From assembly GCA_965285935.1 (NCBI GenBank), contig OZ260661.1:17670001-17734000 (forward strand): a DNA stretch of 64,000 nt. The letters run 5' to 3'. Positions 39,136 through 59,856 of the stretch are shown here, in pieces (the stretch's first letter is position 1; every line of letters begins with the position of its first letter). The notes below the pieces were generated by a model. It did no database searches and was not told the origin of the DNA. It saw nothing but the letters and a program-made list of their open reading frames with translations. This DNA comes from Ophelia neglecta (Eukaryota). The position numbers and the translations under genes were made by a program.

Positions 39136-40807
39136 GGAAGTTTTATATTATTGTGTTTTAGTATACGTTTCTATTGTCACAAGTCAAGATTCTTTTGGGG
39201 AAGGTGGAAGGCAACTGTCTACTACAACATTATCAATAATGTTCTAGAAGATTATTGATAATGTTCAGCAGACGGTTGTCTAGTCACTGTCTGGCTTGAC
39301 CGTCTGGCACAATCTGTGACTACCTGAATGCATACCTGTGAATATGTATAGCACAGGTCCCGATGGTGCTGTGCTACACAGTATATGGTTTTTCACCTGG
39401 TCTTACAGTTCTGCCTATTAGAAAGAGACAATGATTGCCAATAAATAGTAAGATATGATAGTCATATAATACAAATATTTATTTTGCTTGATATTAACAA
39501 GAAATGGATAGGCCCATTAATCTCATTTGAAATGTGTTGATTAAATTCATGGCCAGGGCCCCGCCTGTTTGAAGCAGGACCATATCAAGCATACCTAGCC
39601 TTACTTGTGGACACAGGTTCACTGCATAATTAATTTTGTACATCAAATCACTAGGCCTGTATATCAGTCCATTTATTGCCAGACGAGTGTCCAGCGAATG
39701 ACCACCTAGGGGTGGAGCAGACAGTGTCTGCAGCACAGTCTAGGATTTTGGTCACATTTGCCAACTGTCTGGTTTATAATTATTCCAACAAAATCTATTT
39801 AAACGTTTATACTAAGTGAGACAGTGTTCTCGGCTCCAGGGTCATTCCTAATAAAGTGCTCCAAGGCTGCGACCTGTCGCACTTTATTATGAATAATATC
39901 TCTCACTTAATGAGTTACTGCACTCATATATCATGAGTATCAGTTCATGTTTTGACTTACATTTGAAAAAGATATGATTTTTTAATTATGTGGCATAAAA
40001 GAATAGGGAATATTCACTTATGCAACTTTGTGCCGCATTACACTGTCCCACTGATAAGGAAACGTTCAGTGTACTCGCGTAGCTCGATCAGCTGTTTCTG
40101 TCAACAATGAAGGGGGCAGCTGCACTAAGCATCACTGACTAAGCTTTACTAGCCTGAGTTCCCAGCGTAAACAAACATCATTTTACGTAAATCTGGGGCT
40201 GAGGAAAATTGTGTGATATTTCCATATTATTCTATATAGTATGATTATCATATGACTGTATTTAAATTAACGCAATCAGTCGTGTTTTGAGTAGTTATTC
40301 AACATTGTTTGACAGTACCTACCGAGAGAGGAGGAGAGTTCTCTGGCACATTAATGCGCATGCACATATTACCCGAAATACAGAATTGTCTGCTAGGCGT
40401 TTCAAAGGAGCAAGTACGTTTAAATGCCAATTCAGAGACAATTTGAGTTTTGTTTAGAGAAGTAAACAGGTGGACGTTAGAAGCGTTTTCTTCACTACAT
40501 GAGGAGGTAACCCTTGTAGGTTTATTCACGTCATATTTAGATAGTACGCCTAAGAAATAATTCACAAATTGTGAGGCACACGGCACAAAAATACTATTTT
40601 TTAAAGAGTTCTGCTGGGATTTCCCATCAATCCCAATGTAAACTGATTGCGTAGTTTTAAGGCATATAATCGATCTCTCATAAACATTTAATATTGAAAT
40701 GGGATAGTTTAATGTATTTTCACAGTTTATTGATATTCAAGGCATGTAATCGTATACTACTCACAAATACTGTATGTAGACAGGTGTGTTTCAGGTATAT
40801 AACATTA

Positions 40808-43800
40808 TGGCCAGTCACAGTGATCATGTCCAGTTGATGTGCAGATTTTGTGGCAGCAAAAATAAAGAAGAAAAACAAACTTTTACAGTGGCAAAGCATA
40901 AAGGGGTTTTGAAAAAAGTGTATTCCATTGATCTAGAAAAGGACCTTTATCCAGATATCCATCCAAATCGTTGCTTTAAGACATGTGACACTAGTCTGAG
41001 GAGGCTTAAAGAAAATTTGTTGAAAAGAAGGGCTGTGGATGCAAAGCATGAGGTGTTTGATTTTAAGGAACATGATTCTGAAAATTGTCCCGTATGTGGA
41101 ATCCCCAAACAAGGAAGCATAGGGGTAGCTTGTGCTTCTTCTGTTGAAGTGCAAAATATGGAAGAGACTAGTCTGTCAATGGAAGATATGCCATCAACCA
41201 GCCATGGTGAACCTGGGGTATCCCGCAAAAATAAATCTATTGCCAGAAAAAGTTTAACCTTTGAAGATCAACCTGAAGAACATACCACTAGAACCGTGTT
41301 TGGTGAAATTGAAATAACCAGTTTTGCTGTCGAAAGGTTCCAAGCACAGAAAATTGCCGAGTTATTTTCCTGTGGCATATGTAAGGGATTTCCTTCATTA
41401 CCCACATCTACACCTTGCGGAAATATTTTTTGTCTGACTTGTATGCAGGCTTGGCAAGGTGGAGCAAACACATGCCCGATGTGTAGGGAAGCCCTTGCTG
41501 AAGGCATAATGGAAAACCTGATACGAGATACGAAGGAAATACGAGATACACAGATACGAAAAATTAAGATTGAGTTAGATTATGACAGGGTTAGGGGTAG
41601 GGTTAAGCTATCAACCTAACTAAATCATAACTTACTTAACCCTTCAAACTAACCCTAACCTAGTCCATATGGCTACGTTTTAAACACCTCGCATCTCGTA
41701 TCTGCGTCTCGTATCTGGTATTTCGTATCAGCTTTTCCAGTATGCCCTTGCTGAAAGTGATCTCACAGACTTGAAAGGACATATTTCACAGTTGTATGAT
41801 TGCTTGACACTTGTGTGTGTTAATGAAGAGGTAGGTAGTCGGTTCACTGGCAGCATCAACCAAATGATTGAACATGAAAAATCATGCAAAGTCAGTGTGG
41901 CCAAAAGAAGTAGAGGATGTGGTTTCAACAAAAAAAGTTTGAAAGACTCTAAGATTACATATGTCAATACATTTAGAATGAAGCCTTGTTTGGAGACAGC
42001 AATCCCTATTATAGACACCTTTTGTGCAGACAACAAAGAAGACAAATATGATGTTATGTTTTACCTCCTGATCAATCATTTAAACCAGGTAAGGCAGTAT
42101 GTAGTCAACAATTTCATCTCCTATTTTTATAGGCTAGGGCAATAAAATGAATTAGTTATTGCCTGAACTTCCTGACTAATTTGGTGATAATTACAATTTA
42201 TAAAAAATCTCGTATATAATGGCAGATGAAACATGTTAATAATGACACCTTCACGTTTAGGAGAGACATGAAAAGTATAGAGGTACGAAAGGTTCGGATG
42301 GGAAGCATGCAGAGTAGCCAGCTAACTACCGAAGAATGTTTAGCCATGAGAGTGGACACCCTTCAGTCCAAAAAAAAACAATACAAAAACCAATATGTTT
42401 TTTGAGAAGTTTTGAAAGGTGTGTTTCAGGTTAATTAAAATAAAACATTGTAATTTATTAGAAAATACTACCAGCTATTCAGCCATGACTTTACAATATT
42501 AATTTCATGTTAATTTGTGGCATGATTCTAACAGTTATATCAGTTTAGTACTGTAGTGTGGGATAACAAACCAGTTTAATTTCTTTTTGCAGTCTCAAGT
42601 ACACAAACCCCTTGCTTAGTCCATATGCAGTTAGCCGAGCTGAATTAGGGTTCATGCCTGCCACTGCCCGTTTTGCTGTGGAGTCGGGTGACGAAGAACT
42701 GGCTTACTATCATACTCCAATCAAACCTCCCAAAAGTGGTACTTCCTTCTCATCTACAGTTGGCATGGGTGCTGATCCAATAAATATTATAGATGACTTC
42801 TTAGTGAGCATCCCCGAAGTACATTCTCTCAACATGGCTGGAGTGAGATGGAGTTATATTGAAGCTCTTGCAAGGACTTTAGAAGAACTGGATTCTGATG
42901 TTGAGTGCAATGTTTGGCCATAGGGTTGTCATCTACGAATAAACTATTTCTAGTTACTGTTAAAGATGGTGCTGATGGCCTTGGTGACATTTCTGTATAT
43001 AAGCAGGTTGGAGATAGGACCCTTCCAGACAAAGCTTTTCGAGCTTCATTCTGTGTTTTGAAGATTGAGATTTTGTTGGACAAAGGTGAAAAAAAATCGG
43101 TCTTTGTAGAGGAAAAGCCTAATTCTATACGCACAAACCGCCCCTATTTACAGGCTGTAGCTAATGAGAATGATAAGGCCTCTTCTGTCACATGTCTTGT
43201 ACCTATGGAGGCTGAAAGGCAATACCTACAGGACAAAGTTCTTAAGGTTGAAGGAGAGAATGGCTGGAAAATGTACAAAGTAGACTTCTACAATTCTATG
43301 ACAGATGAGAAGCTAGATAGGAAGGAGGGTGGATTGGCAGGCAGTGGGTCTGATTACTTGTGCACACTGTGTTATGCAACAAGAGAAAGTGCCAAACAAA
43401 AACTTGGAACATTTTCGATTACCACAAAAGAGGAAACCACAAAAATAGCCCAGTACCTGGAAGAGAACCCAGACAATCTTAGTCAAAAAGAACTTGACAA
43501 TGTTGCTAAGGGAGTTAAAGCAATTCCAATACTGACCAGTGATCCGACTAAACACAACACATGCAGATATTAACAATGGCAGGTTTCTGAAAAATCTAAT
43601 TTGTCGTGAAATAGCCGGAGTTAATAGCTGGAACTTAAGCCAGGACATAAAACCCCTCGTAGATGAAGCTGAGAGAAAATTTGATAGACATTTAAAAGCA
43701 GTGGTTGGTATGAACTCTGCCCTAATGATGCCTGGCAATTATGCTAGAGAAATGTTCAAGGAAGAAAATGAGGCTCATTTATTGCATTTTGTGCCATCCG

Positions 43801-44268
43801 AGCGCAAGACCTTGCCATCTGAATTAATTGCCCAATACAGGTTGATGAGAAAAGTGTACAGAGCTAACCATCCCCTGACAGAGTTTCCAGATTTAGTGCA
43901 GGACTATAAAGACATTTCTGTAAAATTTGGCACTATTTTGCTAGAGTCATTTAGCTATGCCCAATGGCCTAACTACATTCACAAGGTTATTGAACATGCC
44001 CAAGAACTCATTGTAGAAGGCCCTGGAAAAGTAGGTGGGTTGTCAGGAGAAGGAATAGAGGGTGGCAACAAAGTGTTCAGACACTCGCAAGTTGTTGTCT
44101 AGGAAAGGTTGTGTAGAGGATAGCCTGCGTGATGTTTTGGTTTTGCATTGGTTAAACAGCAGCCCTAAATTGTACAAAATATCAAATGTGGCTCATGAAC
44201 AAAAAAGATGTGGAAAATGCTTTGCTTTAGGACACAATTCACATGTGCTAGATGACATTTATACTTAA
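40808..44268 (+). pseudogene. RAG1L: RAG1-like recombinase/transposase, full domain set, disrupted by a MITE and several frameshifts; two probable introns (42089-42260, 42419-42592)
   Basis: CND: CRFCG...DIHPNRCFKTC...HDSENCPVC. RING: CGICKG...TPCGNIFCLTC...CPMC. EECLAMRVDTLQS matches RAG1 AVCLAIRVNTFLS. Core: VKDGADGLGD (D600), EEKPNS, TDEKLDRKEGGLAGSGSDYLCTLC (D708), NYIHKVIEH...GEGIEGGNKVFR (E962), DVLVLHWL. Tail: CGKCFALGHN. Confidence 0.96.
41503..41746. mobile_element. MITE family A inserted in RAG1L just after the RING
   Basis: TSD CTTGCTGAA at 41494-41502 and 41747-41755. Precise removal fuses ORF 40786 with ORF 41771 in frame (REALAE-SDLTDLKGH). Confidence 0.95.
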
Positions 44269-45333
44269 AATTATTACCTCCCGGTGTGTATTTAGGGTGT
44301 TATATTGATAAATGGTTATTTCTTAAAAAGTGTGAAGTCAAAGCAGTGCAATGCATATTGAAAAGTACCATGTTAGCTAGTTGTATGACTAAAGCAAAAT
44401 ATAACAAGTGAAAGATCTATTCTGGTGAATATATAAACTTTGATACCTTTATTACAGCACAATACATGTCATATTGACATCGTGAAGGCTTCAGAGTTCT
44501 TATAAGCTCCCAAGCTTACAAGGAACAAGCCTGTTATGTAAGACTACTTAAAAATATGACAATAAAATGAACAATGTAAAGTCACAATTGGCAATTATTT
44601 ATGTTTAGGTACCGTCGCTGTAAAATCTAGTTATATAGTTAAATTGGGTGCCATCTACTTTCTGCAGCAGCTGTTATTTCAACGGGAACATCCCTATATT
44701 CCGAAGGTCCATATGTCAGTATTTATTTGATTTTTTTAATGGCCTCTAGGCCTCCATTAGTAAAACAGTAAAACATTGTAAGGTTGTACTGTCTTCATTG
44801 ATGTTTTCTTTATCTAAATTTGTTCCAAAAGTGAATTGCTTGCGTGTCAAAATTGGAGTGTTGAAAATTGAGCTTGGCGATATAAATCAAGTATAGTTTG
44901 TAAACATACAGGTAGTATCTGAAATTCTTTCTGTTAGTCTCATAATAAGGCCAGCCTCTCCGGGTTAGCCTAATTTAACTAAATGTCATAACCCCACTTT
45001 AATACAATGATAAAAAGATATCAAGCATGTATTCCTATATGTGCAGTCACCAGATGAAGGGGCCCTACATTATCCCCACGTGAGCTTGTTCCATATACCT
45101 GGAAAAGCACGGCGACGGTGGGTATAGTGATAAGCAGGCAACACCCTGTAGTATGCGGTACAACGCGTAAATTTATCTCATTTACCTATAATTTGGTGGA
45201 TGTATATATACGAGTCTGACATAACGCTTTAACATGGAAATGGCCGGAAAAAAAAGATGTCGACGAAGGGCAAACGGAGAACAACATCTTGAGTTCCCTG
45301 ATCAATTTTCGTTGGGAAAACTGAGAGGTAACT

Positions 45334-45472
45334 GGCATACTGGAAAACCTGATACGAAATACGAAGGAAATACGAGATACACAGATACGAAAAATTAAGA
45401 TTGAGTTGGATTATGACAGGGTAAGGGCTGCGTCTCGTATCTGGTATTTCGTATCAGCTTTTCCAGTATGCC
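45334..45472. mobile_element. MITE family A, internally deleted copy
   Basis: TSD GAGGTAACT at 45325-45333 and 45473-45481. Confidence 0.92.
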
Positions 45473-45699
45473 GAGGTAACTTTAGATTAATAAAGCTTTA
45501 ACAAAATATAGTTTGATTATCGATTATTGATCTTAATTTTTCTTTACATGATACGTTGGTAGCGGTATTGCATTTTTATGTGTAATGCTGTAAATTATGT
45601 ATGTTGATAAAGGTTTTAATTGGGTCTATACAAATCACATATTGGATTCCTAGAAAATTGAGTTAGTAGGGTGTTGGAAACACAAACCATATATATGTA

Positions 45700-45942
45700 G
45701 GCATACTGGAAAACCTGATACGAAATACGAAGGAAAAACGAGATACACAGATACGAAAAATTAAGATTGAGTTGGGTTATGACGGGGTTAGGGGTAGGGT
45801 TAAGCTAGCAACCTAACTAAACCATAACTTACTTTATCCTTCACCCTAACCCTAACCTAGTCCATATGGCTACGTTTTAAACACCTCGTATCTCGTATCT
45901 GCGTCTCGTATCTGGTATTCGTATCAGCTTTTCCAGTATGCC
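45700..45942. mobile_element. MITE family A
   Basis: TSD ATATATGTA at 45691-45699 and 45943-45951. Confidence 0.93.
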
Positions 45943-46633
45943 ATATATGTAGGGTTATAAAGGTAAGGTAAGGTAAGGTTTATTATAACAATAGGCATGA
46001 CAGCCTGTGTGTTACATTTATACAATTTACAAGTAATAATGAGGAATATGCGAGGCGGAGCACAACAACACCCAAATCACCAGGCATATGCATTTCTGAT
46101 TTTAGTAGCCTTCTTTATAAATATGGCTAAGTTATTCAATGTTTTTACATTTTCCACATTAAGTTCTATGTGTCAGTGACAAAACAAGATAGAGAACCAT
46201 TGGGCTACACTGCCAATTTACTTAGGCTTAAAGCAAGATTTACCTTGGGCTGCAAAATAGCCCAGGCAAACGATACATAATATATGAAAATAATTATTAA
46301 GTAACATCAAGCAAAAAATACTAATCATGGGTGGGAGGGAGGGAATTTCACTCAGCCTCCGGCGAGTGCAAACCTGATGTGGACGGCCTTGAACTTAATA
46401 CTGCCAATATCCCAATTCGTCCCACTGGCAACTCGTCACAATCACTTAACCTCAATTAAGTATATATACTATAATTGTCATTTAAGTTCTATGTGTCAGT
46501 GACAAAACAAGATAGAGAACCATTGGGCTACACTGCCAATTTACTTAGGCTTAAAGCAAGATTTACCTTGGGCTGCAAAATAGCCCATAACAAAGCCCAA
46601 GGAAAAGGGGCAAACCATAATATACTAGAATAA

Positions 46634-47605
46634 TTAATGATGGGAACAGACACGGTGTGCCATACTGGCCAAGGATTCCTCCGGTGCCCGAATATAACGC
46701 TGATAAGCCGAACTTGACCAGCGTCCAAGAAGTTTTACTTCCCAATCGCTGAGGCCGGCCGCTGCCGCCGACGTAGCGCTACCCGAGCGAAACGAGTGCC
46801 CACTAAACAAGTCTGGTTGGTAACCTGCCAGAGCCAAATATAACCTTGTGTCCTTCACAAAGGATTCTTTGGAGAGTGCATGTCCATGGTGGAGTAGTAG
46901 GGGCCCTTGAGGATTCCAGCTGCCTGCTGAATGCCTGTAGTCAATGTAACTTAGCATGGCACAGTGTCCACACTCCACGGTACCGGTACATCCTATAATT
47001 ATACGACACCCTTTGTTAAGAGTATCCGATTTGCTTCGACTGAGAAACACAGACATAAAAGGTGGTCCTTTCTTTGTCGTATGGAAGTTCACATCCTGAG
47101 CACAAAGATGAAGGTCGGGTGAAAATGATTTACCCACAGCCACAGTGAGTTCACCTGCACGAAGACATCCAAAAAAGGCCAGCGACATGGCGGGCCACAA
47201 GCAGTTTCCTGACGAGGCTGGCGGAATTAACGGCATAAGTTTACATAGGATATCAAATGTTATTGGCAGTTTCTGCTTTGTAGGGGTCCCAGCGATATCT
47301 AGAGCCCTCAGAGACTTAGCAACACGCACTGAATTCTCCAAAGGGTTGGCATATCCATTTTCTACATGATATGACCGTATTGCGGCGAGGTAGACCCGAA
47401 TTGACCCTGTACGCAAGTTTTGCAGGCTAAGGAAGGAAATAAATCTCAGCAGTGTAGGCTCACTGGCTGGAAGCTTGTCTAAGTTCTACTGGTCACAGAA
47501 ATCCACGAATCGCTTCACCCCAGAAGCATAAGTGTGACGCGTATTAGGTCTCACGCTCTCCCTGATCAAAGTGGCTGCTTGACTGTCAATGGCCTCCAAG
47601 GGCAT
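46634..47605 (-). pseudogene. Tyrosine recombinase of the Ngaro element, with one in-frame stop at 47486-47488
   Basis: AFFGCLRAGE, SKSD, GHSFRSGSAT, LGRWSSSAYQRY. The frame extends upstream to ATG 47605 (MPLEAIDSQAATLIRESVRPNTRHTYASGVKRFVDFCDQ*). Confidence 0.9.
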
Positions 47606-47770
47606 GGCTGAAAAGAGGGACAAGTCACCTTTAATAAAATGCAGGATAGGTCAAGTGTAGAAGAAGAAAACGGCTAAAAGCCCACGCACAAGAGAAGTGC
47701 AACACGTAATTACAGGCGGCATTGCCAGACGCCCAACAGGGCATAGACGTACAGTTAACAAGGTAATCGC

Positions 47771-49585
47771 TCAAATGTTTACTGAGCAGCTGAAATCTCT
47801 AATGTCATTAGGTCTAGAATCCGCCCCTGGGGCCAAGCTATGGAAAAGCGTGATATTCTGTCGGCTGAGGGAATCTGCCAAGACGTTGTCCTGGGTAGGA
47901 ATGTAAATTGCTGTTATTTCAAAGTCACCTTGCGCTGCTACCAGAAAAAGAGCTCTCACCAAGTCCATGATAAGTGAATCTTTACAAGTGCCTGAAGATA
48001 ACACCTGTACAATGCATTGGTTGTCACAGTGGAGGATTATGCGCATTCCCCTCCACAGGTGTCCCCATGCCCTAGCTGCTAGTAGGATGGCATAAAGTTC
48101 TCTCCAGTTGATGCTGCGTTCTCTGAGGGACGCATGTTTGTCTGTGAACGGCATAACATACCACATGTTTCCGAAAACCCCAGCGACTGCCTTGTCACTA
48201 GCGTCTGTGTATAAGTGCAAAGCAGAACTGGAGGTCCAATCCGCTTCATTCATCATGGCTACCCCATTCCAGGATGGTAAGTATCTGAGCCACCAAGCGA
48301 GATCCTTCTTGAACTCCACATTTAGTCTCACTCTGTAGTGTAAATATTTGGCACGGCTGGAGAGACTGATCATACGACGGACAAAGGTTCTCCCCGGGCG
48401 GACCACCCTCGCGACAAACATGAGCTTTCCTACTAAAGACAGGAGTTCGCGTTTCCGGCATGACCTCCTCTCTGTCCAACCAGATAGCTCATTAATGACG
48501 TCTGCAAGTCTTTGTGGTGAAATCCTTAGTTCCATCAGAATTGTGTCCAATATGATACCAAGGAACTCCATGACAGGGGAAGGAGCACATACCTTTGTAG
48601 GGTTCACAGTTAGACACAATTTATCACACACTGAGGTCATGGTGTCGAGGTTACTTTGACACTCCTCCGTGTCTGCCGTACCAGCCGTTACATAATCATC
48701 CAGATAGTGGTCAACAAATGTTACTCCCTGGTACCACATGATGAGCTTTGCAGCATGAGCGATGTCTGTAAATAGTTTCGGGCTGCTACGTAAACCAAAT
48801 TGTAACACGACGTCATAGTAATACTGACGAACCCAGCTGCCAGAAAGAGGGTCAATCATATCGAGAGAATAACCCAGCAGTTCCCAGTCTTCCTTTCTTA
48901 CTGGGACATGCTTGAAGGCGTCAGCCAAGTCCAGTTTGGCAAGGAGGGTACCCTTGCCTCTAGCTACTATATGCCGAACTACGTCGTCCAAAGACAAATA
49001 AGACACGTGAAAGTCTTCTGGGTCAATATGGTCATTTACTGAATCTCCAGGCGGCCATGAAAGGTCGTGAATGACTCGGACTTTATTAGAATTTCTTTTA
49101 CGAAATGCCCCCATAGGTGAACTCACAAAGTTTTCAAATGGTGGGGTGGAGAAGGGGCCAATGGTGGTTCCATAGCACATATCTTTTTGAATGCAATCCT
49201 TAACTTCTTCGAAATATTCCTCCACCGAAGGCCAATTTTTGTGCACTCTAAGTTGTCTGTCTCCCTTGTAGCCAATGTCTACTCCGCTTGCCAGTGCCGT
49301 GTCTATCCGAGAGACAAACTCCCTATCGGGATGGGGACGGAGCCCCTCCAGGAAAGCCTCCCTGTTGAGGTTACGTGGTTTGACAGGGGCACTTGAATTG
49401 AGGTTGGGGTCCGTAGCAGTGCCAACAAACATGCCCTCTGCGGCACTGATCGCCGTTTTGACATCGGCCTCTGTTGAAGTTGAAACACACTTCCTGTGGT
49501 GCCCGCTGATGACTCTCACCTCGTCGGAAGCGTGGTTGTGGAGACGGGGCTGCTGGAAAGGGACATTCTGTGACCAGGTGGTCAC
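47771..49585 (-). CDS. Ngaro reverse transcriptase / RNase H
   Basis: RVIHDLS, KLDLADAFKHVP, FGLRSSPKLF, HYLDDY, YTDAS, INWRELYAI, HCDNQ, NVLADSLSR. Confidence 0.95.
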   Translation of the reverse strand: MTTWSQNVPFQQPRLHNHASDEVRVISGHHRKCVSTSTEADVKTAISAAEGMFVGTATDPNLNSSAPVKPRNLNREAFLEGLRPHPDREFVSRIDTALASGVDIGYKGDRQLRVHKNWPSVEEYFEEVKDCIQKDMCYGTTIGPFSTPPFENFVSSPMGAFRKRNSNKVRVIHDLSWPPGDSVNDHIDPEDFHVSYLSLDDVVRHIVARGKGTLLAKLDLADAFKHVPVRKEDWELLGYSLDMIDPLSGSWVRQYYYDVVLQFGLRSSPKLFTDIAHAAKLIMWYQGVTFVDHYLDDYVTAGTADTEECQSNLDTMTSVCDKLCLTVNPTKVCAPSPVMEFLGIILDTILMELRISPQRLADVINELSGWTERRSCRKRELLSLVGKLMFVARVVRPGRTFVRRMISLSSRAKYLHYRVRLNVEFKKDLAWWLRYLPSWNGVAMMNEADWTSSSALHLYTDASDKAVAGVFGNMWYVMPFTDKHASLRERSINWRELYAILLAARAWGHLWRGMRIILHCDNQCIVQVLSSGTCKDSLIMDLVRALFLVAAQGDFEITAIYIPTQDNVLADSLSRQNITLFHSLAPGADSRPNDIRDFSCSVNI

Positions 49586-49609
49586 AGGCTTTGCAACGGT
49601 GACAGCGCA

Positions 49610-50354
49610 TTAAGGTCGGTTTTAGAGCAGAAGAGTCAAATAATAGTGTCTGAAGTTCTAGGTCAGGTTGTCCAAATAGTAAGCTCTCCCTTTTGCTGAG
49701 TTGCATGCGAAATTGTTGGTCATATGCCAGCACTGTGGGCCAAATGTACCTTTTGTCCCATTCCTGTATTCTGCGCCTGTAGGCCAAACATTGTATGTAG
49801 ATTCCTGGGTCTGACAACACCAAAACTTCTTCATAGGCGTTCCACGCCTGCATCCAAGTGAGAAAATTAGGTACAATTTTACCTTCCTTTCCGCCCTGCT
49901 TACCACCGTGTTGCATTCCCAATTGCGTGGACTCCAGAACTTCTAATAAATTGATGAACTCACCTCTCCTGGCCCTGTCCTTCCAAGAGTGAGGTGGTGC
50001 GGGCGATATTACTGGGGCCGACATTACTGGAGCCGACATTACTGGGGCCGGCGGGCTCGCACTAACTGGCTTTGGCAGAATTTCCGGATAGTCTGGCGAA
50101 ATCGTTTCTAGTTTCTTCATCCTTTCCCCCATATCCTGCAGGCCCACTGTTAGACTGCTCACCTGCTGCAGAATCTCGTGCATCATGCCAATCACTGATT
50201 CCGTAGGGTCAGCTCCTCGGGGTGACGCTCCCGGTTTCCCGCCGCCAGCACTTTTAGGTCTAACATCCGCGTCGCTGGCCGGTCCCATCTGGCATAGCTC
50301 TCCTAAAGGTTTAGGATGGCCTTTCGAGTCCCTACCGCACCTACTGCACTTCAT
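49610..50354 (-). CDS. Ngaro gag-like ORF with CCHC/CCCH fingers
   Basis: CSRCG...H...C, FLTWMQAWNAYEE, LAYDQQFR, CHRCKACDH and a C-terminal CFNFNRGRC...C...HVCWHC motif; overlaps or abuts the RT ORF. Boundaries approximate. Confidence 0.8.
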
Positions 50355-53300
50355 AATCGCCCCTGTCCGACTCTGACAGATCAAATTACGAGCTAGACAG
50401 GACCATTTCACTCAGCCTCCGGCGAGTGCAAACCTGTGGACGGCCTTGAACTTAATACTGCCAATATCCCAATTCGTCCCACTGGCAACTCGTCACAATC
50501 ACTTAACCTCAATTAAGTATATATACTATAATTGTCATTTAAATAATTCAATGAACTTTTGTATACTAGGACGAACCACATAATATCGCGATATATACTT
50601 TGCCCTGATTTCAAAGTACAGACAACATTCTACAATAAAATGATACTCGTCCTCTAACACGTTACATACTAAACATTTTCTCTCATTAAAACTAACTGGT
50701 GGTTTCTTCCAGCTTCCAGATTCAACAAGGAGATCGTGATTTCGGGTTCTAAATCTGCTTAAGACAAATATGTTTCTGTATGACACTTTTGACATATAAA
50801 ATGGTAAACAAATAGGCTTACATATTTCGGTATACAGATTTCCCTTACTAGACCCTTCAAAACCAGAAGACCAGTTTTGTTTATAAGAGTCCAACATCCG
50901 TTGCTTAAAAAGCACTAAACATTGTTTTATATGTCCCACCCCTTGATTTTCCCAGACGAAACCAAACCCATACACAAAGAGCAAGTTTTTCACATTGGTT
51001 GCCCATGTGTCACCACGTGTGTGATCTTTCATAATCATATATATTTTAGAAGACAATTTCTGAATATTTCCGTTAACAAGTGAGAACCAAAATTTCATTA
51101 TTATAAGATTTCGTGTTATAAAAACAGGGTGTCGACCAAGTTCACCATACACAAATTCGTTTTTTGTTGAAGACTTTAAGTGAAGAATCTTTTTACAGAA
51201 CCCAAGATGAACTTTCTCAACGTCTGGGGCTTTATGAAACCCCCAAACTTCAGCTGCATAATGCAAAATTGGCAGGACCAATTTATCAAACAGGTCACAT
51301 AAGTGGTCTGGCCTTAAATCTAACCTATAAGTATACTTAAGTAAACTGAACATTGCCTTTTTTTCTTGATAAGCCAAAGTTTTTTGTGCAAAAGTCCAAG
51401 TACCACTCGCAGAAAATAAAACACCCAAATAGCTTAACTGACCAACAACCTCCAAAGGAATACCTTTATAAATCCAATGATCAGCAGTTGACAAGCGCCC
51501 ACCCTTCCTAAAAACAATTATTTTAGTTTTTATCTGTATTGAGAACTAATTTCCACTGATCACAATAATTTTCTAAATGATTCAAACTATTTTGTAACCC
51601 CCTCGAACTATCAGCCAACAAGGATGCATCATCATCATAAAGAAGAATAAAAAGCTGCAACATTTCTATAGATACGCCAGAAACGCCATTAGCATTTAAG
51701 GTTTCCTCTAAATCGTTAACATACATTGCAAATAGGAATGGGCTTAGGCTTTCACCTTGCCTTACACCAAGGAGACATTCAAAAGTATTTGACATTTGGC
51801 CGTTATAATCACGCACTCTTGATTTAACTACTGAATACATACTTTTGAGGATTTTAAGAATATTTCCTGTGACACCTAACTTTATCAATTTATACCACAG
51901 TCCATCCCGATTTATAAAATCAAATGCTTTACGAAAGTCAATAAAAGCGCAATACAACTTTTGTTTCCCATTTAGAAAGTGTGAAATCAATGCATTTAGA
52001 GTAAAAATAATGTCTACTATACTAAAACCTCTTCTGAATCCAGACTGTCCCTCAATATAAATAGCATATTTTTCTGCCCAAGTATTTAATCTAGTGTCTA
52101 GTATTTTTGTGAAGAGTTTCCCCAGGGTGCTCAACAATGTGATACCTCTATATAATTTTGTACAGACTGTCCCTCAATATAAATAGCATATTTTTCTGCC
52201 CAAGTATTTAATCTAGTGTCTAGTATTTTTGTGAAGAGTTTCCCCAGGGTGCTCAACAATGTGATACCTCTATAATTTTGTACATTATGCACGTTGCCTT
52301 TCTTATGAACTGGAACAACAATACCTTCTGTCCACTGTTCTGGAAAATAACCACTTCTAAAAACAGCATTGAACAGTTGTACTAAATATGGAACCATGAT
52401 GTTGGAACCATATTTGAACAGTTCATTTATAAGTAAGTCTGGACCACTAGACTTGCCATTTTTTAGCTTTTTAAGTACATACAATATCTCCGCATCACCT
52501 ATAGGAAAATTAAGTTCTTGAAACATTTCATTTATATGATGGGTGAAATGATCATCAACAAAATCTGAAATCTCACGCTCTATTTCAAAATCCTCAATTT
52601 TTTCTGGATTACTAACATCTCGGAAAAAGTCATACAACTGATTTATAAATATGTCTGGATTTGATTCCTCCGCGGGTGGTTTAAGTAATTTCCAATATTA
52701 TTTTGGGTTGTCATCTTTGGCTTGTGTAATCAACTTAACTCCGTTTTTATTATATATTTTCTTACACAGATCTGAATGTTTAGAATATTCATTACGAGCA
52801 TCAACCATTGCTGTCCTACTTCCATCGGTCATATTTTGTCTCATAATATTAAGCTTATTCCTAAACTGCTCTTTAAGATTAATACATACATCACACATCC
52901 ATAGAACACAATTATTACAACATTTCTGATTTCCTCTACCTCGACCAGTCACAAAGGTTTTTCCAAAATAAGGCATTGCACAACCCATCAGCGTGTTTGT
53001 GAAACATTGTACCATTATTTATACCATCTTGATTATGTACATTTTCAACACCCAAAAGTGCCTTGGAGAATTTACCAGTGATCTCCGCTTGTCTCAGGGC
53101 CTCAAAATATTGCCCTAATTTGTCTTCATTCCATAACAATTTAGTAGAAATTTTTTCATCAACTTTCAGACGTGAATTTTTCATTTCACAATGCAGCTCG
53201 AATTTTAAAGTACAGTGATCTGATAACACACCTGGGTCACATATACTGAAATTATTCATAAGTTCAAAGTCCTCACATTTACAAAGGACATAGTCAACCA

Positions 53301-53661
53301 CGCTGGCACCATTCGCTGTATAACAGGAAAAATTTCCAACATTTTTGTCACTGCCAAGCCTCCCATTTACAATACGTAAACTTGTGCCAATACATAAATC
53401 TAACAATTGAGAACCATATTCATTTGTAGACTTGTCTTTGGACCGACGCACCAGATTTACATCCACAACATAATCATCCGGTAATGGCAGGTAAAAACCA
53501 GTATCATTCCTGACATAATCTGGTAATTCGGCTGTACGAGCATTAAAGTCTCCCATTATGAAATATGACTGTTGATTTGCATTTGTATTTTCGAATTCTG
53601 CAATATCAGATATCAATTTATAATAAGGACTGAAATTTAACTGCCTAGAGGATGATGCTGG

Positions 53662-53905
53662 GGCATACTGGAAAACCTGATACAAAATACGAAGGTAATA
53701 TGAGATACACAGATACGAAAAATTAAGATTGAGTTGGATTATGACAGGGTAAGGGGTAGGGTTAAGCTAGCAACCTAACTAAACCATAACTTACTTTATC
53801 CCTAACCCTAACCCTAACCTAGTCCATATGGCTACGTTTTAAACACCTCGTATCTCGTATCTGCGTCTCGTATCTGGTATTTCGTATCAGCTTTTCCAGT
53901 ATGCC
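53662..53905. mobile_element. MITE family A
   Basis: TSD TGATGCTGG at 53653-53661 and 53906-53914. Confidence 0.93.
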
Positions 53906-53934
53906 TGATGCTGGTGGTATGTAGACCAAACAGA

Positions 53935-54179
53935 GGCATACTGGAAAACCTGATACAAAATACCAGATACGAGACACAGATACGAGATGCGAGGTGTTTA
54001 AAACGTAGCCATATAGACAAGGTTAGGGTTAGGGTGAAGGGTTAAGTAGGGAATGATTTAGTTAGGTTCATAGCTTAACCCTGCCCCTAACCCTGCAATA
54101 TCCCAACTCTATCTTATTTTCTCCGTATCTGTGTATCTCGTATTTCCCTCGTGTCTCGTATCAGGTTTTCCAGGATGCC
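53935..54179. mobile_element. MITE family A (variant subfamily)
   Basis: TSD CCAAACAGA at 53926-53934 and 54180-54188. Confidence 0.93.
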
Positions 54180-54603
54180 CCAAACAGATATATACATTCT
54201 TTGCAAAATTAAAATAATCTTTACTTAATTTAAACAAAACAAATACATCGTCACAATTTTTAACAACTTCAACTCCATCTACTACTGACTGCCTAATATA
54301 TATAGCAATACCACCGGAATCTCTTCTTGCTCCAACTGTCCGCTTGCCGCGGTGAAAAGGTTAACAAATATAGCCAGGAAAACTCATTTCTTTCTCCTCT
54401 GATGACCATGTTTCTGTCAGTAATATAAAGTCACAGTCATCTACAGTTTTATTAAATACGCTATTTTCTAACTTTGAATATTTCTTTGTCACTAGTCCTT
54501 GCACATTCCATAAACAAAAAGACAGTGTTGATTTATTTTTTCTAGAAGGTTCATATGCTTTGTCCGTTAATCTAATGTGCGTAGTTTGTGCCCCATGCCG
54601 ATC

Positions 54604-55425
54604 CTAGTAGAATTCATCATAATCAACATCGTCCATTTCGTCTGCAGATTCAACTTTGATCCATTTTTGTGGCATGTTTGGTTTCATTTTACACAGGATA
54701 GCACCATCCACTGTGTATGCAAATTCAACAGCAGACTGCTTCCTAACTGCATCCAACAATTTCTTTCTTGGAGTTGTCAGGTCTTCAACTATAACCAGTT
54801 TGTCACCATATATAGGATTTCTCTTGATTGCTTCCTGGTCAATATTAGCCTTTTTTTTCTTCATGATCTCATGCTTTATGCCTCTTCTCACAAATTTAAC
54901 AATCACACCCCTAGGCTTTCCACTCCGTGGTTTCTTTTCTCCAACGCGATGGAGGACAGATATATCATTTTTGTCTACTGTTGTTCCTGTCTCCCCAATA
55001 GCTGTCATGACCGTCACACCAAGAGTTTCTTCAGTTTCATTTTGATCCTCCAGGATTCCAAAGATACGTATGCTATCTCTTCTAGAATATTGTTCATGTT
55101 TATCACCTTGCATGAGATGCAGATTTTTCTCTCGCTTTAGTTCTTCCAGGAGTGGGTTACTTGCAGCCTCTTTTGCGAGTTCCATGACATCAACCCTATC
55201 CGACAGTGCCTTGATACTTACTGCATATTCCTCTATCTTGGTTTCCAGATTTACTCTCATCTTTTCGCATTTCTCATCCATCTTTTTGATTAGATCTTTT
55301 TTTAAGTCACCCATCTCAGTTTTAATTATATCTTGTTGTTCTAAAACACTATCCAACTTATCATTCATCCCTTTCAAAATCTCCATAACATTTGATGACG
55401 ATGCTTCTGAGAAATCCATCTCCAA
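54604..55425 (-). CDS. LINE ORF1 (coiled coil plus RRM-like/transposase_22-like region)
   Basis: EQYSRRDSIRIFGI, DISVLHRVG...PRGVIVKF and VEDLTTPRKKLL. Confidence 0.85.
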   Translation of the reverse strand: MEMDFSEASSSNVMEILKGMNDKLDSVLEQQDIIKTEMGDLKKDLIKKMDEKCEKMRVNLETKIEEYAVSIKALSDRVDVMELAKEAASNPLLEELKREKNLHLMQGDKHEQYSRRDSIRIFGILEDQNETEETLGVTVMTAIGETGTTVDKNDISVLHRVGEKKPRSGKPRGVIVKFVRRGIKHEIMKKKKANIDQEAIKRNPIYGDKLVIVEDLTTPRKKLLDAVRKQSAVEFAYTVDGAILCKMKPNMPQKWIKVESADEMDDVDYDEFY

Positions 55426-57150
55426 GAAAGGTTACTTAAATGCTGGTCTACTTAAACTGTCTGAGGGTGAACTTTCAAATCTCCTTCTTATACCAGTCAC
55501 TGATCCCTGTGCGGGGGTTTCATTCCCTTTGTCAGACATTGTTTACACCAAGTCACTGGCAGCATACAGTGTACAAAACTATACATATACTGTTCCCTGA
55601 ACAAAGTGTCACAATGGGCTAGTATATACACACAAAGCTCAGTCAGCTGTAACACTGACTGACCAGTCTATCAGATATAGCACTGCCCAAAATCTGATTC
55701 ACTATTTTCTAAAAGAATTACAAACTTTCTATATAAGCCAGTCCTATAATCTGAATCACCACGCATTCACACACGGTCTATACACTTTCTAAAGTCAACT
55801 AAAGCAGTACTTTTACAGAAAAAGAACATTAAACTCAAGCAACCAGAGTGTTGCCATACTCCACCACACACACCATCACATTTCTATAAATTTCTATAAA
55901 CTACCATTATTTACACATATATATGGTTCAAACCAACAATGCAACTAATGGAACAAAGCATGTAAAATGGATTTGATAATGGGCGTATTGCAGCAATCTT
56001 TCTTGAAATAGGGGCAACAATTTAAATTATTTTCAGTTGATAATTAGTTGGCCTTCATAAGGTAATCATAGTACATGAAGACCTTTATCGGGAATTATAT
56101 TTTGAAAATAGACTATTAGCCTAGAGTGCATTTCACACGGGTCATGACCCCAAATTGGGCAATTTAAGTAAGTTAAAAAATAAAGTAACAGCCGAAATTA
56201 TACGCATAATTGACATGACGCAATAAAAGCCAGGAGACCCATGGTTCTTTTCTACACGTAATGCGATTATGGCAATATTTAATAGCTTCGCGTCAATAAT
56301 GAACAAAGTCGACTGTCGGAAATTCTGTTAAAATATTTTCCTAAAACAGAGGGAGAGGCAAAAAAGCCCATGTTGGTGTGATGGCCCGTGACAAACGGTC
56401 TTTAACCTTAACAACTTTTTAAAAAAAAGTATTCGCAATAAAGGTTTCATGCATTCTGTCTACCTTTAGAGAGTCAACTAAATACAAACTGGTCTAAAAT
56501 GCTGCCCCTATTTCATTTATGAAAACAAGGTAGACTATTTCCTTTAAGACTAGCGTTATACTAGCTCTGTATAGGAGCTATATTTCTGGAGTCAAACATA
56601 GTCCCTTTTTATGCTTATATCTATTTCAGTATAACATAGAAATAAACGGTCTACCTTCGGGAAAGGATATTTTTACGGATTTTGGAGTTGAGTAACTAAA
56701 ACTGAGAGAAAGCCAGTGGGGGAAAGAAGACGCTCCTAGAACCGAGAATAATAAATAATTCAATGTGATTATCAAGTAATAATGTTACAAGTTTTCATTC
56801 ACGGATTACGGGAAACAAAATAAGCCAATTTTAGTTCTACACAAGGAAACACCATCCCTTACCTATAGTTAACATGATTAATAGGCATAGGGTGACCATG
56901 AACTATATATACTAATGCTCTTTTTTTCTATAACAGAAAAAAAGGTGAGTCTCACTTGAAATGCACGGAGACCTCACGGTATGCGCCTACGTATATTCTA
57001 TTATATGCATACTATAATCTTCCTCAATTTCAGCCTAGAATAACTAAACAACAACCGTTAACCCCATACTTGCAACATTCGCCTTCATGACCTCACACAG
57101 TTCTGCTGTCACGGCCAACTGGTCGAAGCGCAAAATCATGGCCAAATTAA

Positions 57151-57395
57151 GGCATACTGGAAAAGCTGATACGAAATACCAGATACGAGACGCAGATACG
57201 AGATACGAGGTGTTTAAAACGTAGCCATATGGACTAGGTTAGGGTTAGGGTGAAGGGTTAAGTAAGATATGATTTAGTTAGGTTGCTAGCTTAACCCTAC
57301 CCCTAACCCTGTCATAACCCAACTCTATCTTATTTTTTTCGTATCTGTGTATCTCGTATTTCCTTCGTATTTCGTATCAGGTTTTCCAGTATGCC
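57151..57395. mobile_element. MITE family A
   Basis: TSD CCAAATTAA at 57142-57150 and 57396-57404. Confidence 0.93.
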
Positions 57396-57700
57396 CCAAA
57401 TTAAGGTAGCTCTGCTCATCAGCTTGCTTTGCTTTTTTTGCTTAATTGAGTAGTGCGTGTTTTTAGAAAATTCCGACGCACTATTTATGGACTAAAAATG
57501 CATTATTTTGTACAAAGGAATTTTCGGACTAACGGACCTTCGGACTAACGGACCTTCAGACTAACGGACCTTCGGAACATAGGCATGTAACCATTTCAAC
57601 ATAATGAATCCATAGCTCCTAAAGTGAAAAATGGTAGGACAATAAAAAGACTGACATGCACTGCTAGCCTAACATATATGTACATGTATGTACTGAACAT

Positions 57701-58464
57701 TCACTTGTGCGTGCTTTTCCCTCTACCCTTTTCCTTACCTATTTTTAAAGTACAAGGTGAACAATAAAATTTGCCTCTGGGAACACGCTTAATGCCAGCA
57801 CAAAACTGGGGTAACCACAGCTTACACCCATCACACTGAATCCAAGGAATGGGTGATACCACATCAGAATCAGTTATTTTACACATATCACCCAAGTCAC
57901 ATGGAGAAGGAGCCATTCTCTGGGCATACTGGAAAAGCTGATAACGAAATACCAGATACGAGACGCAGATACGAGATACGAGGTGTTTAAAACGTAGCCA
58001 TATGGACTAAGTTAGGGTTAGGGTGAAGGATAAAGTAAGTTATGGTTTAGTTAGGTTGCTAGCTTAACCCTACCCCTTACCCTGTCATAATCCAACTCAA
58101 TCTTAATTTTTCGTATCTGTGTATCTCGTATTTCCTTCGTATTTCGTATCGGGTTTTCCAGTATTCTTTTGTTTTCTTTTGTCTGTATTTAAAAAGACAG
58201 ACTCAACAGAGCCTCCTGCAATAACTAGTGAATTTTCAATCTCAAAGCTTGAATGACCCCTTGTATTGAAATCTGACAGAGCATAAGATGCCTTGTACAT
58301 GTCACACTGGTTTTCGGCCATATTTATTACAAACAATGTGGAACTACCAGACAATACACTCCTGTGGTAGGGATGTCCGGTAGCTTCTGCTGGATACCAC
58401 CATACACAAAAAAACAGTTGTTGATAACAGACAAACAAAAGTTGGATAGATATACATTATCTGA
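57701..58464 (-). pseudogene. RAG2L: RAG2-like 3' portion: last two kelch-type blades plus PHD finger, split by a MITE and truncated at the 5' end
   Basis: YLSNFCLSVINNCFFVYGGIQQK (alternative frame, 58464-58381), then RGHSSFEIENSLVIAGGSVESVFLNTDKR, then after MITE removal MAPSPCDLGDMCKI...PWIQCDGCKLWLPQFCAGIKRVPRGKFYCSPC. Convergent with RAG1L. Confidence 0.85.
57923..58164. mobile_element. MITE family A inserted in RAG2L between the last kelch blade and the PHD
   Basis: GGCATACTGGAAAAG...TTTTCCAGTAT. The right tip is eroded and the TSD is degenerate (ATTCTCTG / ATTCTTTTG). Confidence 0.9.
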
Positions 58465-58666
58465 GGCTATTGATTAAACGCGGATGTGCGGAGGCTATGC
58501 GGAGGCGGAGGTCATGAGTATTTCTGAGTGGCATGAAGCAAATAATCGTCAGCAAGGACAGGGTTAGGACGGAGGGTTAGTGACAGGTTTGATAGGTCTA
58601 GTGCTCTGTTCTAATTTCTGGATTCACCTCCGCAAGGCTCCGCGCCTCCGCTTTTAATCAAAAGCC
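58465..58666. mobile_element. MITE family B with discordant flanks
   Basis: Reverse-complement homolog of 14636-14861. Flanks ATTATCTGA and CTCTTTTCG do not match. Confidence 0.88.
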
Positions 58667-59053
58667 CTCTTTTCGCAGCATTTATTTTGGCTCAGTCCAA
58701 GCGTTCTTTCTTCTTTCTTTCCTGCGCCATTTTCCTCCTGGTCTTTTCAATTACTTCTCTCAGTTTCTCTTTTTCCGCTCTTTCTCTAACCCTTTCTTTT
58801 CTTCCTTCCGCTTTGACTCTGCCTCTTTCTTCTTGAATTCATCCTGTTTATATCCAAGGAAAGTTTTTGATGTGAAGTGTTCTCCCTCTGGATTCTTTCT
58901 CACCTTCCTTTTCTTCTTCCCCTTTGATCCTCTAAAGTTTACCGGGAGGCTCTCCTTTAACATCCTGCTGACAGGTGTGAGGTTTGCCTCTTGTTCGCTC
59001 ACTTTAAATTTGTCTTTTGTTCTGAGAGTGGGTGTACTAGTGAATTCCCGCAT
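58667..59053 (-). pseudogene. Lys/Glu-rich C-terminal fragment resembling pogo/Fot1-type transposases
   Basis: LPVNFRGSKGKKKRK...GEHFTSKTFLGYKQDEFKKKEAESKRKEEKK; judged on composition and motif only. Confidence 0.4.
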
Positions 59054-59611: not shown

Positions 59612-59856
59612 GGCATACTGGAAAACCTGATACGAAATACCAGATACGAGACACAGATACGAGATACGAGGTGTTTAAAACGTAGCCATATGGACTAGGT
59701 TAGGGTCAGGGTGAAGGGTTAAGGATTGAATGTTCCAGCTAGGTTGCTAGCTTAACCCTACCCCTAACCCTGTCATAACCCAACTCTATCTTATTTTCTC
59801 CGTATCTGTGTATCTCGTATTTCCCTCGTGTCTCGTATCAGGTTTTCCAGTATGCC
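59612..59856. mobile_element. MITE family A (variant subfamily)
   Basis: TSD GGGTACGTT at 59603-59611 and 59857-59865. Confidence 0.93.

What the first reader, a model, noticed from the sequence alone, without database searches (positions are those of the whole stretch)
40808..58464. Hidden ProtoRAG-type transposon: convergent RAG1L-RAG2L pair in an invertebrate genome
Seen: a RAG1 homolog with all non-core and core domains on +, a kelch-kelch-PHD fragment on - pointing toward it, and one TSD-bounded insertion that accounts for almost all of the gap. Established: tail-to-tail RAG1L-RAG2L is the architecture of amphioxus ProtoRAG and other invertebrate RAGL transposons, the proposed ancestors of the V(D)J recombinase. 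Transib has neither the RING-bearing N-terminus nor RAG2. Inference: this is a fossil copy of a RAGL family. It could be a new lineage record, and it suggests intact sister copies with RSS-like TIRs may exist elsewhere in the genome.
Basis: partly seen in the sequence, partly recalled or inferred. Interest (0 to 1): 0.95.

Follow-up and report, generated by a model that had tools for sequence, protein, structure and literature searches.

The report
Dead RAG-like transposon copy, both ends lost
This stretch holds a broken, end-less copy of a RAG-like (RAGL-B) transposon, the invertebrate kin of the vertebrate V(D)J recombinase genes; the same genome also carries complete copies with inverted ends and 5-bp target duplications, but such elements are already known from related animals.

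Summary
A RAG1-like gene lies on + (40807-44268). It has three homology-inferred exons and is broken by one MITE, one nonsense codon and three frameshifts. The last ~165 codons of a RAG2-like gene (kelch blades plus PHD) lie convergent on - (58467-57701).

One TIR- and TSD-bounded transposon (44684-57592), stuffed with other elements, accounts for 12.9 kb of the 13.4-kb gap.

RAG1L matches amphioxus BbRAG1L far better than vertebrate RAG1, with no Transib hit. In the tree it sits in RAGL-B. Its RAG2L piece is 53-61% identical to the RAG2L of its sister family.

Every one of the nine other RAG1L copies in this genome with enough flank fetched has a convergent RAG2L. Four copies in two families have CAC-initiated TIRs and 5-bp TSDs. 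Two of them are 99.7% identical.

The window copy has lost both ends, so no TIR or TSD is present here.

Mitochondrial code and gene order indicate a protostome, probably a lophotrochozoan. The species is unknown, so "new lineage record" cannot be judged. RAGL pairs in lophotrochozoans are published.

Verdict: new member of a known kind, moderate interest. The scan's other notes on this stretch come from this same window.

The parts
40353..40813 (.). Internal piece of an unrelated dispersed repeat. It abuts RAG1L and supplies the first two codons (ATG GCC). It marks the 5' break of the RAGL remnant.
   Evidence: At least 10 copies at 93-97% identity. The other copies continue with conserved sequence on both sides that the window lacks. 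Two variants (L043, L044) match through 40813.
40807..42088 (+). RAG1L exon 1: N-terminal Cys-rich region and RING finger, then the region up to ...HLNQ|gtaagg.
   Evidence: Pfam RING E 3e-7, RAG1_imp_bd E 7e-5. 40% identity over 235 aa and 59% over 110 aa to family-2 RAG1L. Donor GT at 42089.
41503..41756 (.). About 245-bp MITE plus 9-bp TSD (CTTGCTGAA) inserted in RAG1L exon 1, just after the RING finger.
   Evidence: Many 98% copies genome-wide and seven more copies in the window. Junction sequences.
42261..42419 (+). RAG1L exon 2 (boundaries inferred by homology), with an in-frame TGA at 42403-42405.
   Evidence: Translation aligns with family-2 exon 2 and with P0001 residues about 364-408. 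DNA is 74% identical to C2/C8 copies.
42593..44268 (+). RAG1L exon 3: catalytic core and C-terminal zinc-knuckle tail. Frameshifts near 42900, 43552 and 44085. Stop at 44266-44268.
   Evidence: Pfam RAG1 and BbRAG1L hits. Stitched alignment keeps DEDE, C-x2-C and H-x4-H ligands, with Met at the R848 site and Ile at the E649 site. CCGH is kept but the last Cys of CX2CX3GHX4C is lost.
44269..44683 (.). Left part of the original RAG1L-RAG2L spacer.
   Evidence: With 57601-57700 it gives about 515 bp, against about 416 bp in family 2. 44318-44665 recurs at 97% just past the window end.
44684..57592 (.). One DNA-transposon insertion with 27-bp TIR GGGAACATCCCTATATTCCGAAGGTCC and 8-bp TSD ATTTCAAC. 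It is swollen to 12.9 kb by nested LTR, LINE and MITE insertions.
   Evidence: TSD and TIRs. Family copies elsewhere are about 2.3-2.4 kb and start and end at these positions. RT/RNase H, RVT_1 and endonuclease ORFs inside. MITE copies inside.
57701..58467 (-). RAG2L 3' fragment: the last one and a half to two kelch blades, a short linker without acidic hinge, and the PHD finger. One frameshift at about 58360-58366. The PHD zinc-ligand His is replaced by Pro. Stop at 57701-57703.
   Evidence: tblastn with family-2 RAG2L: E 3e-25 and 2e-21, 53-61% identity, residues 206-370 of 382. With family-1 RAG2L: E 9e-14. Pfam PHD E 3e-4.
57920..58173 (.). Second copy of the same MITE, inserted between the last kelch blade and the PHD of RAG2L.
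   Evidence: 98-99% copies genome-wide. It is absent from the duplicate of this fragment at C1:17740606-17741216.
58465..58667 (.). Unrelated dispersed repeat that starts exactly where the RAG2L homology stops. It marks the 3' break of the remnant.
   Evidence: Copies at window 14635-14861 and in three other loci. No RAG2L residues 1-205 anywhere in the window.

Best explanation
Window positions about 40814-58467 are the decayed remnant of one insertion of a RAGL-B (ProtoRAG-type) DNA transposon. When intact, such an element carries a RAG1-like DDE transposase gene and a convergent RAG2-like kelch-PHD cofactor gene between CAC-initiated terminal inverted repeats. It moves by cut-and-paste and makes 5-bp target duplications.

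Shown here:
- Both genes are present in the tail-to-tail arrangement.
- RAG1L keeps its catalytic and zinc-binding residues and the transposase-type residues. It is dead through a MITE insertion, one nonsense codon and three frameshifts.
- RAG2L keeps only its last ~165 codons, with a frameshift, a MITE and a lost zinc ligand.
- Almost all of the 13.4-kb gap is one later transposon insertion that collected further elements.
- Both ends of the element are replaced by unrelated repeats.
- Complete sister elements with TIRs and 5-bp TSDs exist in the same genome.

Inferred: this copy once had TIRs and arrived by transposition. It belongs to an older branch of the lineage that also gave the two 99.7%-identical family-2 copies.
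For: RAG1L identity:
- Pfam RAG1 and RING hits.
- BbRAG1L E 2e-47 for each of two pieces, against 1e-27 / 1e-18 for vertebrate RAG1 and no Transib hit.
- Colinear tblastn coverage of P0001 residues 176-961 and of the sister family's N-terminus from Met1.

Placement: the window copy is sister to family 2 (C8:1111026-1118584, C2:83631146-83638601) with 100 SH-aLRT, at 67-68% aa identity. It lies inside RAGL-B with bivalve, echinoderm and amphioxus RAG1L. It lies outside Ptychodera RAGL-A and vertebrate RAG1.

Residues: DEDE, CC/HH ligands, Met at R848 and Ile at E649. Numbering and meaning follow PMC10629977. 67 of 74 columns invariant in nine references are kept.

RAG2L:
- E 3e-25 / 2e-21 to family-2 RAG2L.
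- Family-2 to family-1 RAG2L E 4e-42.
- Family-1 RAG2L to BbRAG2L E 4e-18 and Pfam RAG2 23.6 bits against a cut-off of 21.

Linkage: the convergent pair is found in all nine other copies with enough flank fetched, at eight loci. It is also found next to the closest outside relatives P0001 and P0154.

Transposon nature of the kin: homology between copies ends exactly at CACGAACAAATGTT or CACATAGAAAAC ends, flanked by TSDs ATATG, TACAG, GTTCA and GTGTG.

Spacer: after removing 44684-57592 plus one TSD, about 515 bp remain, against about 416 bp in family 2.
Against: No TIR and no TSD could be found at this locus. A scan for the family-2 TIR gave fewer matches than chance. The 5' region of family 2 has no significant similarity upstream of the gene.

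The copy has no close sibling. The nearest DNA identity is 67%, so transposition of this particular sublineage is not directly shown.

Exon boundaries rest on homology and GT-AG only. No RNA run holds the stretch.

The RAG2L part is only about a third of the gene.
Confidence: 0.9

Rival explanations
1. The pair was a domesticated, TIR-less host RAG1L-RAG2L gene pair, as described in several protostomes, that later became a pseudogene. It would not be a plain transposon fossil.
For: No TIR or TSD at the locus. It is a single-copy sublineage without close siblings. Catalytic and structural residues are largely kept, which fits a long period under selection. TIR-less pairs are reported in protostomes (PMC7204232).
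Against: Both ends are visibly broken by foreign repeats, so the absence of TIRs is uninformative. The nearest relatives in the same genome are bona fide transposons. Selection on the transposase within a transposon lineage explains the conserved residues equally well. The locus is a repeat-rich graveyard.
Confidence: 0.07
2. The + strand gene is a Transib-type transposase, and the kelch-PHD piece on the - strand belongs to an unrelated host gene that lies nearby by chance.
For: The kelch piece alone has no PDB hit. The PHD alone hits generic PHD fingers.
Against: No Transib hit for the window pieces, and 130 orders of magnitude weaker than BbRAG1L for the sister core. A RING-bearing N-terminus is present. 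The kelch-PHD piece is 53-61% identical and colinear with the RAG2L of the sister transposon. The convergent linkage recurs in all nine other copies.
Confidence: 0.01
3. The arrangement is an assembly artefact that joins separate repeats.
For: The region is full of young repeats. Part of it (spacer plus RAG2L fragment) occurs twice within 13 kb.
Against: Three runs of one sample hold 67-81% of the sampled words of 40786-44300, though this may be the source sample. The spacer halves on either side of the 12.9-kb insertion share an exact 8-bp TSD. Spacer length after excision matches the sister family.
Confidence: 0.02

Closest known systems
RAGL-B transposons of protostomes (oysters, Pinctada, the nemertean Notospermus; Martin et al. 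2020, PMC7204232)
   Same: Convergent RAG1L-RAG2L. RAG1L has a RING finger, a DEDE core and a zinc-knuckle tail. RAG2L has kelch plus PHD and no acidic hinge. Sister copies in this genome have CAC...AAA TIRs like the protostome consensus CACTWMCAAACKTYK, and 5-bp TSDs. Many incomplete fossil copies are also described there.
   Different: The closest named RAG1L proteins (Mercenaria 52%, Pinctada 50% identity to the sister family) fall in other clades of the tree. The TIR sequences were not found in that paper's supplements. The window copy itself has no ends.
Amphioxus ProtoRAG (BbRAG1L/BbRAG2L, PDB 6b40)
   Same: Best solved-structure match for both proteins. Same gene order and orientation. 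Met at the R848 site, a hydrophobic residue at the E649 site, and the CCGHC tail.
   Different: About 43-55% identity only. RAG2L here carries a PHD finger; that BbRAG2L lacks one is from my own recollection and was not tested here. RAG1L here has two short introns by homology.
Vertebrate RAG1-RAG2 and RAGL-A of Ptychodera and echinoderms (Martin et al. 2023, PMC10629977)
   Same: Same fold families, the same convergent arrangement and the same catalytic tetrad.
   Different: The window copy lies outside the RAG1 plus RAGL-A side of the tree. It lacks Glu at 649 and Arg at 848, and has no acidic hinge between kelch and PHD.
Transib transposons
   Same: A distantly related DDE core and CAC-initiated TIRs with 5-bp TSDs.
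   Different: Transib has no RAG2L partner and no RING N-terminus. Sequence similarity is marginal (E 9e-5 against 2e-134).

Membership tests
RAGL transposon (RAGL-B) | RAG1L with the catalytic DEDE tetrad and the C-x2-C / H-x4-H zinc ligands | tested here: met
   Alignment: DGLGD, ANEND (Glu kept), TDEK, EGIE; CTLC; HKVIEH. The offsets +62 and +108 in the turtle RAG1 row match D600/E662/D708.
RAGL transposon (RAGL-B) | RAG1L N-terminal region with RING zinc finger | tested here: met
   Pfam RING families E 3e-7 to 5e-6. Colinear with the sister family from Met1.
RAGL transposon (RAGL-B) | C-terminal tail with the CX2CX3GHX4C zinc knuckle | tested here: inconclusive
   CGKCFALGHNS is present but the final Cys is lost. 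It is intact in family 2 (CSKCFTFGHNSRSC).
RAGL transposon (RAGL-B) | Convergent (tail-to-tail) RAG2L gene with a kelch propeller | tested here: met
   Orientation and homology are shown. Only residues 206-370 of 382 survive, so the propeller is incomplete.
RAGL transposon (RAGL-B) | RAG2L without an acidic hinge (B, not A) | tested here: met
   About 10 residues link the last blade to the PHD (…TDKR / MAPSPCDL…) in the window and in family 2.
RAGL transposon (RAGL-B) | Transposition-permissive residues: Met at the R848 site and non-Glu at the E649 site | tested here: met
   LMMPGNYAR against vertebrate MRMNGNFAR; PNSIR against PNSEL. Meaning from PMC10629977.
RAGL transposon (RAGL-B) | Terminal inverted repeats beginning 5'-CAC | tested here: not met
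   None at this locus. Both ends are replaced by foreign repeats. The feature is met in sister families 1 and 2.
RAGL transposon (RAGL-B) | 5-bp target site duplication | not testable with these tools
   The ends are missing in the window. Sister copies have ATATG, TACAG, GTTCA and GTGTG.
RAGL transposon (RAGL-B) | Phylogenetic placement of RAG1L within RAGL-B | tested here: met
   Trees of 42 and 46 rows. There is no Transib outgroup in the tree, so the root was set on vertebrate RAG1.
Transib | Transposase closest to Transib, with no RAG2L partner and no RING N-terminus | tested here: not met
RAGL-A / vertebrate RAG | Acidic hinge in RAG2(L), Glu or Gln at position 649, and clustering with RAG1 | tested here: not met

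The most novel reading that the evidence does not exclude
The genome that holds this fossil carries a RAGL-B family that was active very recently, or still is. Two 7.5-kb copies on different chromosomes are 99.7% identical, with perfect TIRs and 5-bp TSDs. Between them there is an open version of each gene. The host would be a lophotrochozoan lineage whose RAG1L proteins are at most 55% identical to anything in the public protein sets. That would be a new host lineage and a fresh candidate for an active invertebrate RAG transposon.
Probability: 0.3. Interest if true: 0.6.

Novelty: new member of a known kind. Interest (0 to 1): 0.4.

Why it matters
RAGL transposons are the accepted ancestors of the V(D)J recombinase, so each new lineage adds to the picture of how widely and how recently they were active. 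This window adds only a dead, end-less copy.

Its value is as a pointer. The same genome holds three RAGL-B families. Among them are TIR/TSD-bounded copies and a near-identical pair, which could serve for transposition assays or for dating RAGL activity in a protostome.

It does not change the current model of an ancient bilaterian origin, vertical descent and repeated fossilisation.

Tried and rejected
- **Species identification failed.** A 129-aa COX1 piece found only unnamed fragments. Cluster look-ups of the nearest RAG1L, RAG2L and COX1 proteins gave no names. Sequencing runs are coded. The scan's notes hold nothing on taxonomy.
- **Mitochondrial code and gene order gave only a broad placement.** AAA=Lys, ATA=Met, AGR=Ser, TGA=Trp, with the order nad3-nad2-cox1-nad4L. 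This excludes echinoderms, hemichordates, flatworms and cnidarians, and speaks against amphioxus.
- **A PDB search with the kelch piece alone gave nothing.** It needed the sister RAG2L as a bridge.
- **TIR search at the locus failed.** The pattern scan gave 13 matches against about 23 expected by chance. Local alignment of the family-2 5' end scored below the shuffled controls.
- **Protostome consensus TIR scan gave nothing near the window genes.**
- **TIR strings were not found in the supplements of PMC7204232.**
- **Joined models.** X-joined tblastn pieces were used only inside local scripts for the alignment and trees.


Full report
**What is in the window: RAG1L**

On the + strand a RAG1-like gene runs from 40807 to 44268.
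- Its pieces carry a RING finger (E 3e-7) and the Pfam RAG1 core (positions 206-594, E 8e-30 and 8e-19).
- Each core piece hits amphioxus BbRAG1L (PDB 6b40_A) at E about 2e-47. Vertebrate RAG1 scores 1e-27 to 1e-16, and Transib does not appear at E<=1.
- A 1015-aa relative (P0001, 60% identical in the core) aligns colinearly over its residues 176-961.
- The N-terminus aligns from residue 1 with a sister copy elsewhere in the genome.

**Gene model**

The model is inferred by homology with that sister family and from GT-AG sites. No RNA evidence exists.
- Exon 1 is 40807-42088.
- Exon 2 is about 42261-42419.
- Exon 3 is about 42593-44268.

**Defects in RAG1L**
- A 245-bp MITE with a 9-bp TSD lies at 41503-41756.
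- An in-frame TGA lies at 42403-42405.
- Frameshifts lie near 42900, 43552 and 44085.
- The last Cys of the CX2CX3GHX4C tail is lost.

**What RAG1L still keeps**
- The DEDE tetrad and both zinc-ligand pairs are intact.
- Met stands at the R848 site and Ile at the E649 site. These are the transposase-type states described in PMC10629977.
- 67 of 74 columns that are invariant in nine RAG1/RAG1L references are kept.

**RAG2L**

On the - strand, 58467-57701 holds three colinear pieces. They match residues 206-370 of the 382-aa RAG2L exon of the sister family at 53-61% identity (E 2e-21 and 3e-25).
- These residues are the last kelch blades, a short linker without acidic hinge, and the PHD finger.
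- There is one frameshift near 58360-58366.
- A second copy of the same MITE lies at about 57920-58173.
- The PHD zinc-ligand His is replaced by Pro.

On their own the kelch piece had no PDB hit and the PHD looked generic. The identification therefore rests on a chain of three links:
- window fragment to family-2 RAG2L;
- family-2 to family-1 RAG2L, E 4e-42;
- family-1 RAG2L to BbRAG2L (6b40_M, E 4e-18) and Pfam RAG2 above its cut-off.

RAG2L residues 1-205 are nowhere in the window.

**The gap between the genes**
- The 8-bp repeat ATTTCAAC (44676-44683 and 57593-57600) flanks an element with 27-bp imperfect TIRs.
- Other copies of that element are about 2.3-2.4 kb and begin and end at the same positions.
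- Here it is swollen to 12.9 kb by an LTR element, a LINE and several MITEs.
- Removing it leaves about 515 bp between the two stop codons, close to the 416 bp of the sister family.

**The ends of the remnant**
- 40353-40813 is an internal piece of an unrelated repeat that even supplies the ATG.
- Everything further upstream to 38315 is other repeats.
- At 58465 another dispersed repeat starts exactly where RAG2L homology stops.
- No TIR was found by pattern or by alignment.

The remnant is thus cut at both ends, and TIR and TSD cannot be assessed here.

**The rest of the genome**

The window is C1:17670001-17734000 of a 762-Mb assembly.
- P0001 finds about ten RAG1L loci.
- All nine other copies with enough flank fetched, at eight loci, have a convergent RAG2L 0.5-3.5 kb (mostly 0.5-2 kb) downstream.
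- The copies fall into three families.

| Copy | Family | Length | TIR | TSD |
|---|---|---|---|---|
| C1:15617964-15627567 | 1 | 9604 bp | CACGAACAAATGTT | ATATG |
| C8:1017485-1027049 | 1 | 9565 bp, internal deletions | CACGAACAAATGTT (3' end CATGAAC...) | TACAG |
| C2:83631146-83638601 | 2 | 7456 bp | CACATAGAAAAC | GTTCA |
| C8:1111026-1118584 | 2 | 7559 bp | CACATAGAAAAC | GTGTG (in a GT microsatellite, so weak) |

- The family-1 copies are 93-95% identical, with homology ending exactly at the TIRs. A third copy on C12 was fetched only in part.
- The C1 family-1 copy has an open 464-aa RAG2L.
- The two family-2 copies are 99.7% identical.
- In the C8 family-2 copy RAG1L reads open in all three exons and RAG2L has one stop. 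The C2 copy has an open RAG2L exon and a roughly 100-bp deletion in RAG1L.

The window copy is sister to family 2. Support is 100 SH-aLRT, with 67-68% aa and about 67% DNA identity. It has no closer sibling.

The closest outside relatives, P0001 and P0154, also sit next to a convergent 406-aa kelch gene.

**Family placement**

With the root set on vertebrate RAG1, Ptychodera RAGL-A branches first. All copies from this genome fall in the large RAGL-B group with amphioxus, echinoderm and bivalve RAG1L.

The window clade's nearest neighbours are unnamed assemblies. The nearest named proteins are Mercenaria (52%) and Pinctada (50%).

The intact sister core scores 2e-134 against BbRAG1L, about 1e-71 against RAG1 and 9e-5 against Transib. 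No Transib sequence was available for the tree.

**Host**

The mitochondrial contig uses AAA=Lys, ATA=Met, AGR=Ser and TGA=Trp at conserved COX1 sites. Its gene order is nad3-nad2-cox1-nad4L on one strand.
- By my knowledge of mitochondrial codes, this excludes echinoderms, hemichordates, flatworms and cnidarians.
- The gene order speaks against amphioxus and fits a lophotrochozoan.
- The species could not be named.

**Known or new**

Convergent RAGL pairs, complete TIR/TSD-bounded elements and many fossils are published for bivalves, a nemertean and cnidarians (PMC7204232). [quoted passage not shown]

This is therefore a new member of a known kind. Whether the host lineage is new to the list cannot be decided without its name.

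**A loose end**

Window 44318-44665 recurs at 97% at C1:17734051-17734401. Window 57593-58464 recurs at 94-95% at C1:17740599-17741216, without the MITE.
- The second copy stops at the same RAG2L breakpoint, so the truncation came before the duplication.
- Its 6.2-kb filler begins exactly at the TSD position, but the transposon's ends were not detected there.

I could not fetch it.

Pieces were searched by reference. No joined or spliced model went to a search tool. X-joined tblastn pieces were used only in local scripts for alignment and trees. The reads tools were not used beyond the run search. Nothing was taken for human.

Noticed in passing
G000 C1:15617964-15627567 (L028/L034); C8:1017485-1027049 (L037/L025): Complete RAGL family-1 elements with TIR CACGAACAAATGTT, a second conserved block GCCAT(C/T)TTGAAA 35-45 bp inside each end, and 5-bp TSDs ATATG and TACAG. 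The copies are 93-95% identical. The C1 copy has an open 464-aa RAG2L.
   Followed up: partly
G000 C2:83631146-83638601 (L030/L041); C8:1111026-1118584 (L026/L039/L002): Two RAGL family-2 elements that are 99.7% identical, with TIR CACATAGAAAAC and TSDs GTTCA and GTGTG. This points to very recent transposition. The C8 copy has an open three-exon RAG1L. The C2 copy has an open RAG2L exon.
   Followed up: partly
G000 C1:17734051-17734401 and C1:17740599-17741216 (just past the window end): A second copy of the RAG1L-RAG2L spacer and of the RAG2L fragment, 94-98% identical. It lacks the MITE and has a 6.2-kb filler of unknown content. It could not be fetched.
   Followed up: no
window 12481-12722, 41503-41747, 45334-45427 (partial), 45700-45942, 53662-53905, 53935-54179, 57151-57395, 57923-58164, 59612-59856: A very abundant young MITE of about 244 bp, with TIR GGCATA(A/C)TGGAAAA and a 9-bp TSD. 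Copies are 98-99% identical across all chromosomes. There are eight full copies and one partial copy in this window alone, and it has also inserted into RAGL copies on C8.
   Followed up: partly
window 39158-39896: Another young repeat of about 740 bp with dozens of 97-98% copies, inserted into an older repeat of about 2.9 kb (38315-40346).
   Followed up: no
window 30791-31366 (+) and 36779-37345 (-): Two piggyBac-type transposase C-terminal fragments (DDE_Tnp_1_7 plus zf-Tnp_2) in opposite orientation.
   Followed up: no
window 20450-24750: A GC-rich stretch (0.48-0.53) with the same set of ORFs repeated at a period of about 2985 bp, which suggests a tandem duplication.
   Followed up: no
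G000 C223 (17,755 bp), L021: The mitochondrial contig. It uses the invertebrate code with AGG and AGA as Ser, and has the gene order nad3-nad2-cox1-nad4L on one strand.
   Followed up: partly
G000 C8:1.02-1.24 Mb and C12:73.08-73.61 Mb: RAGL copies of different families cluster within a few hundred kb of each other, including fragments at C8:1085922 and C8:1179677. This suggests repeat-rich graveyards or preferred landing zones.
   Followed up: no
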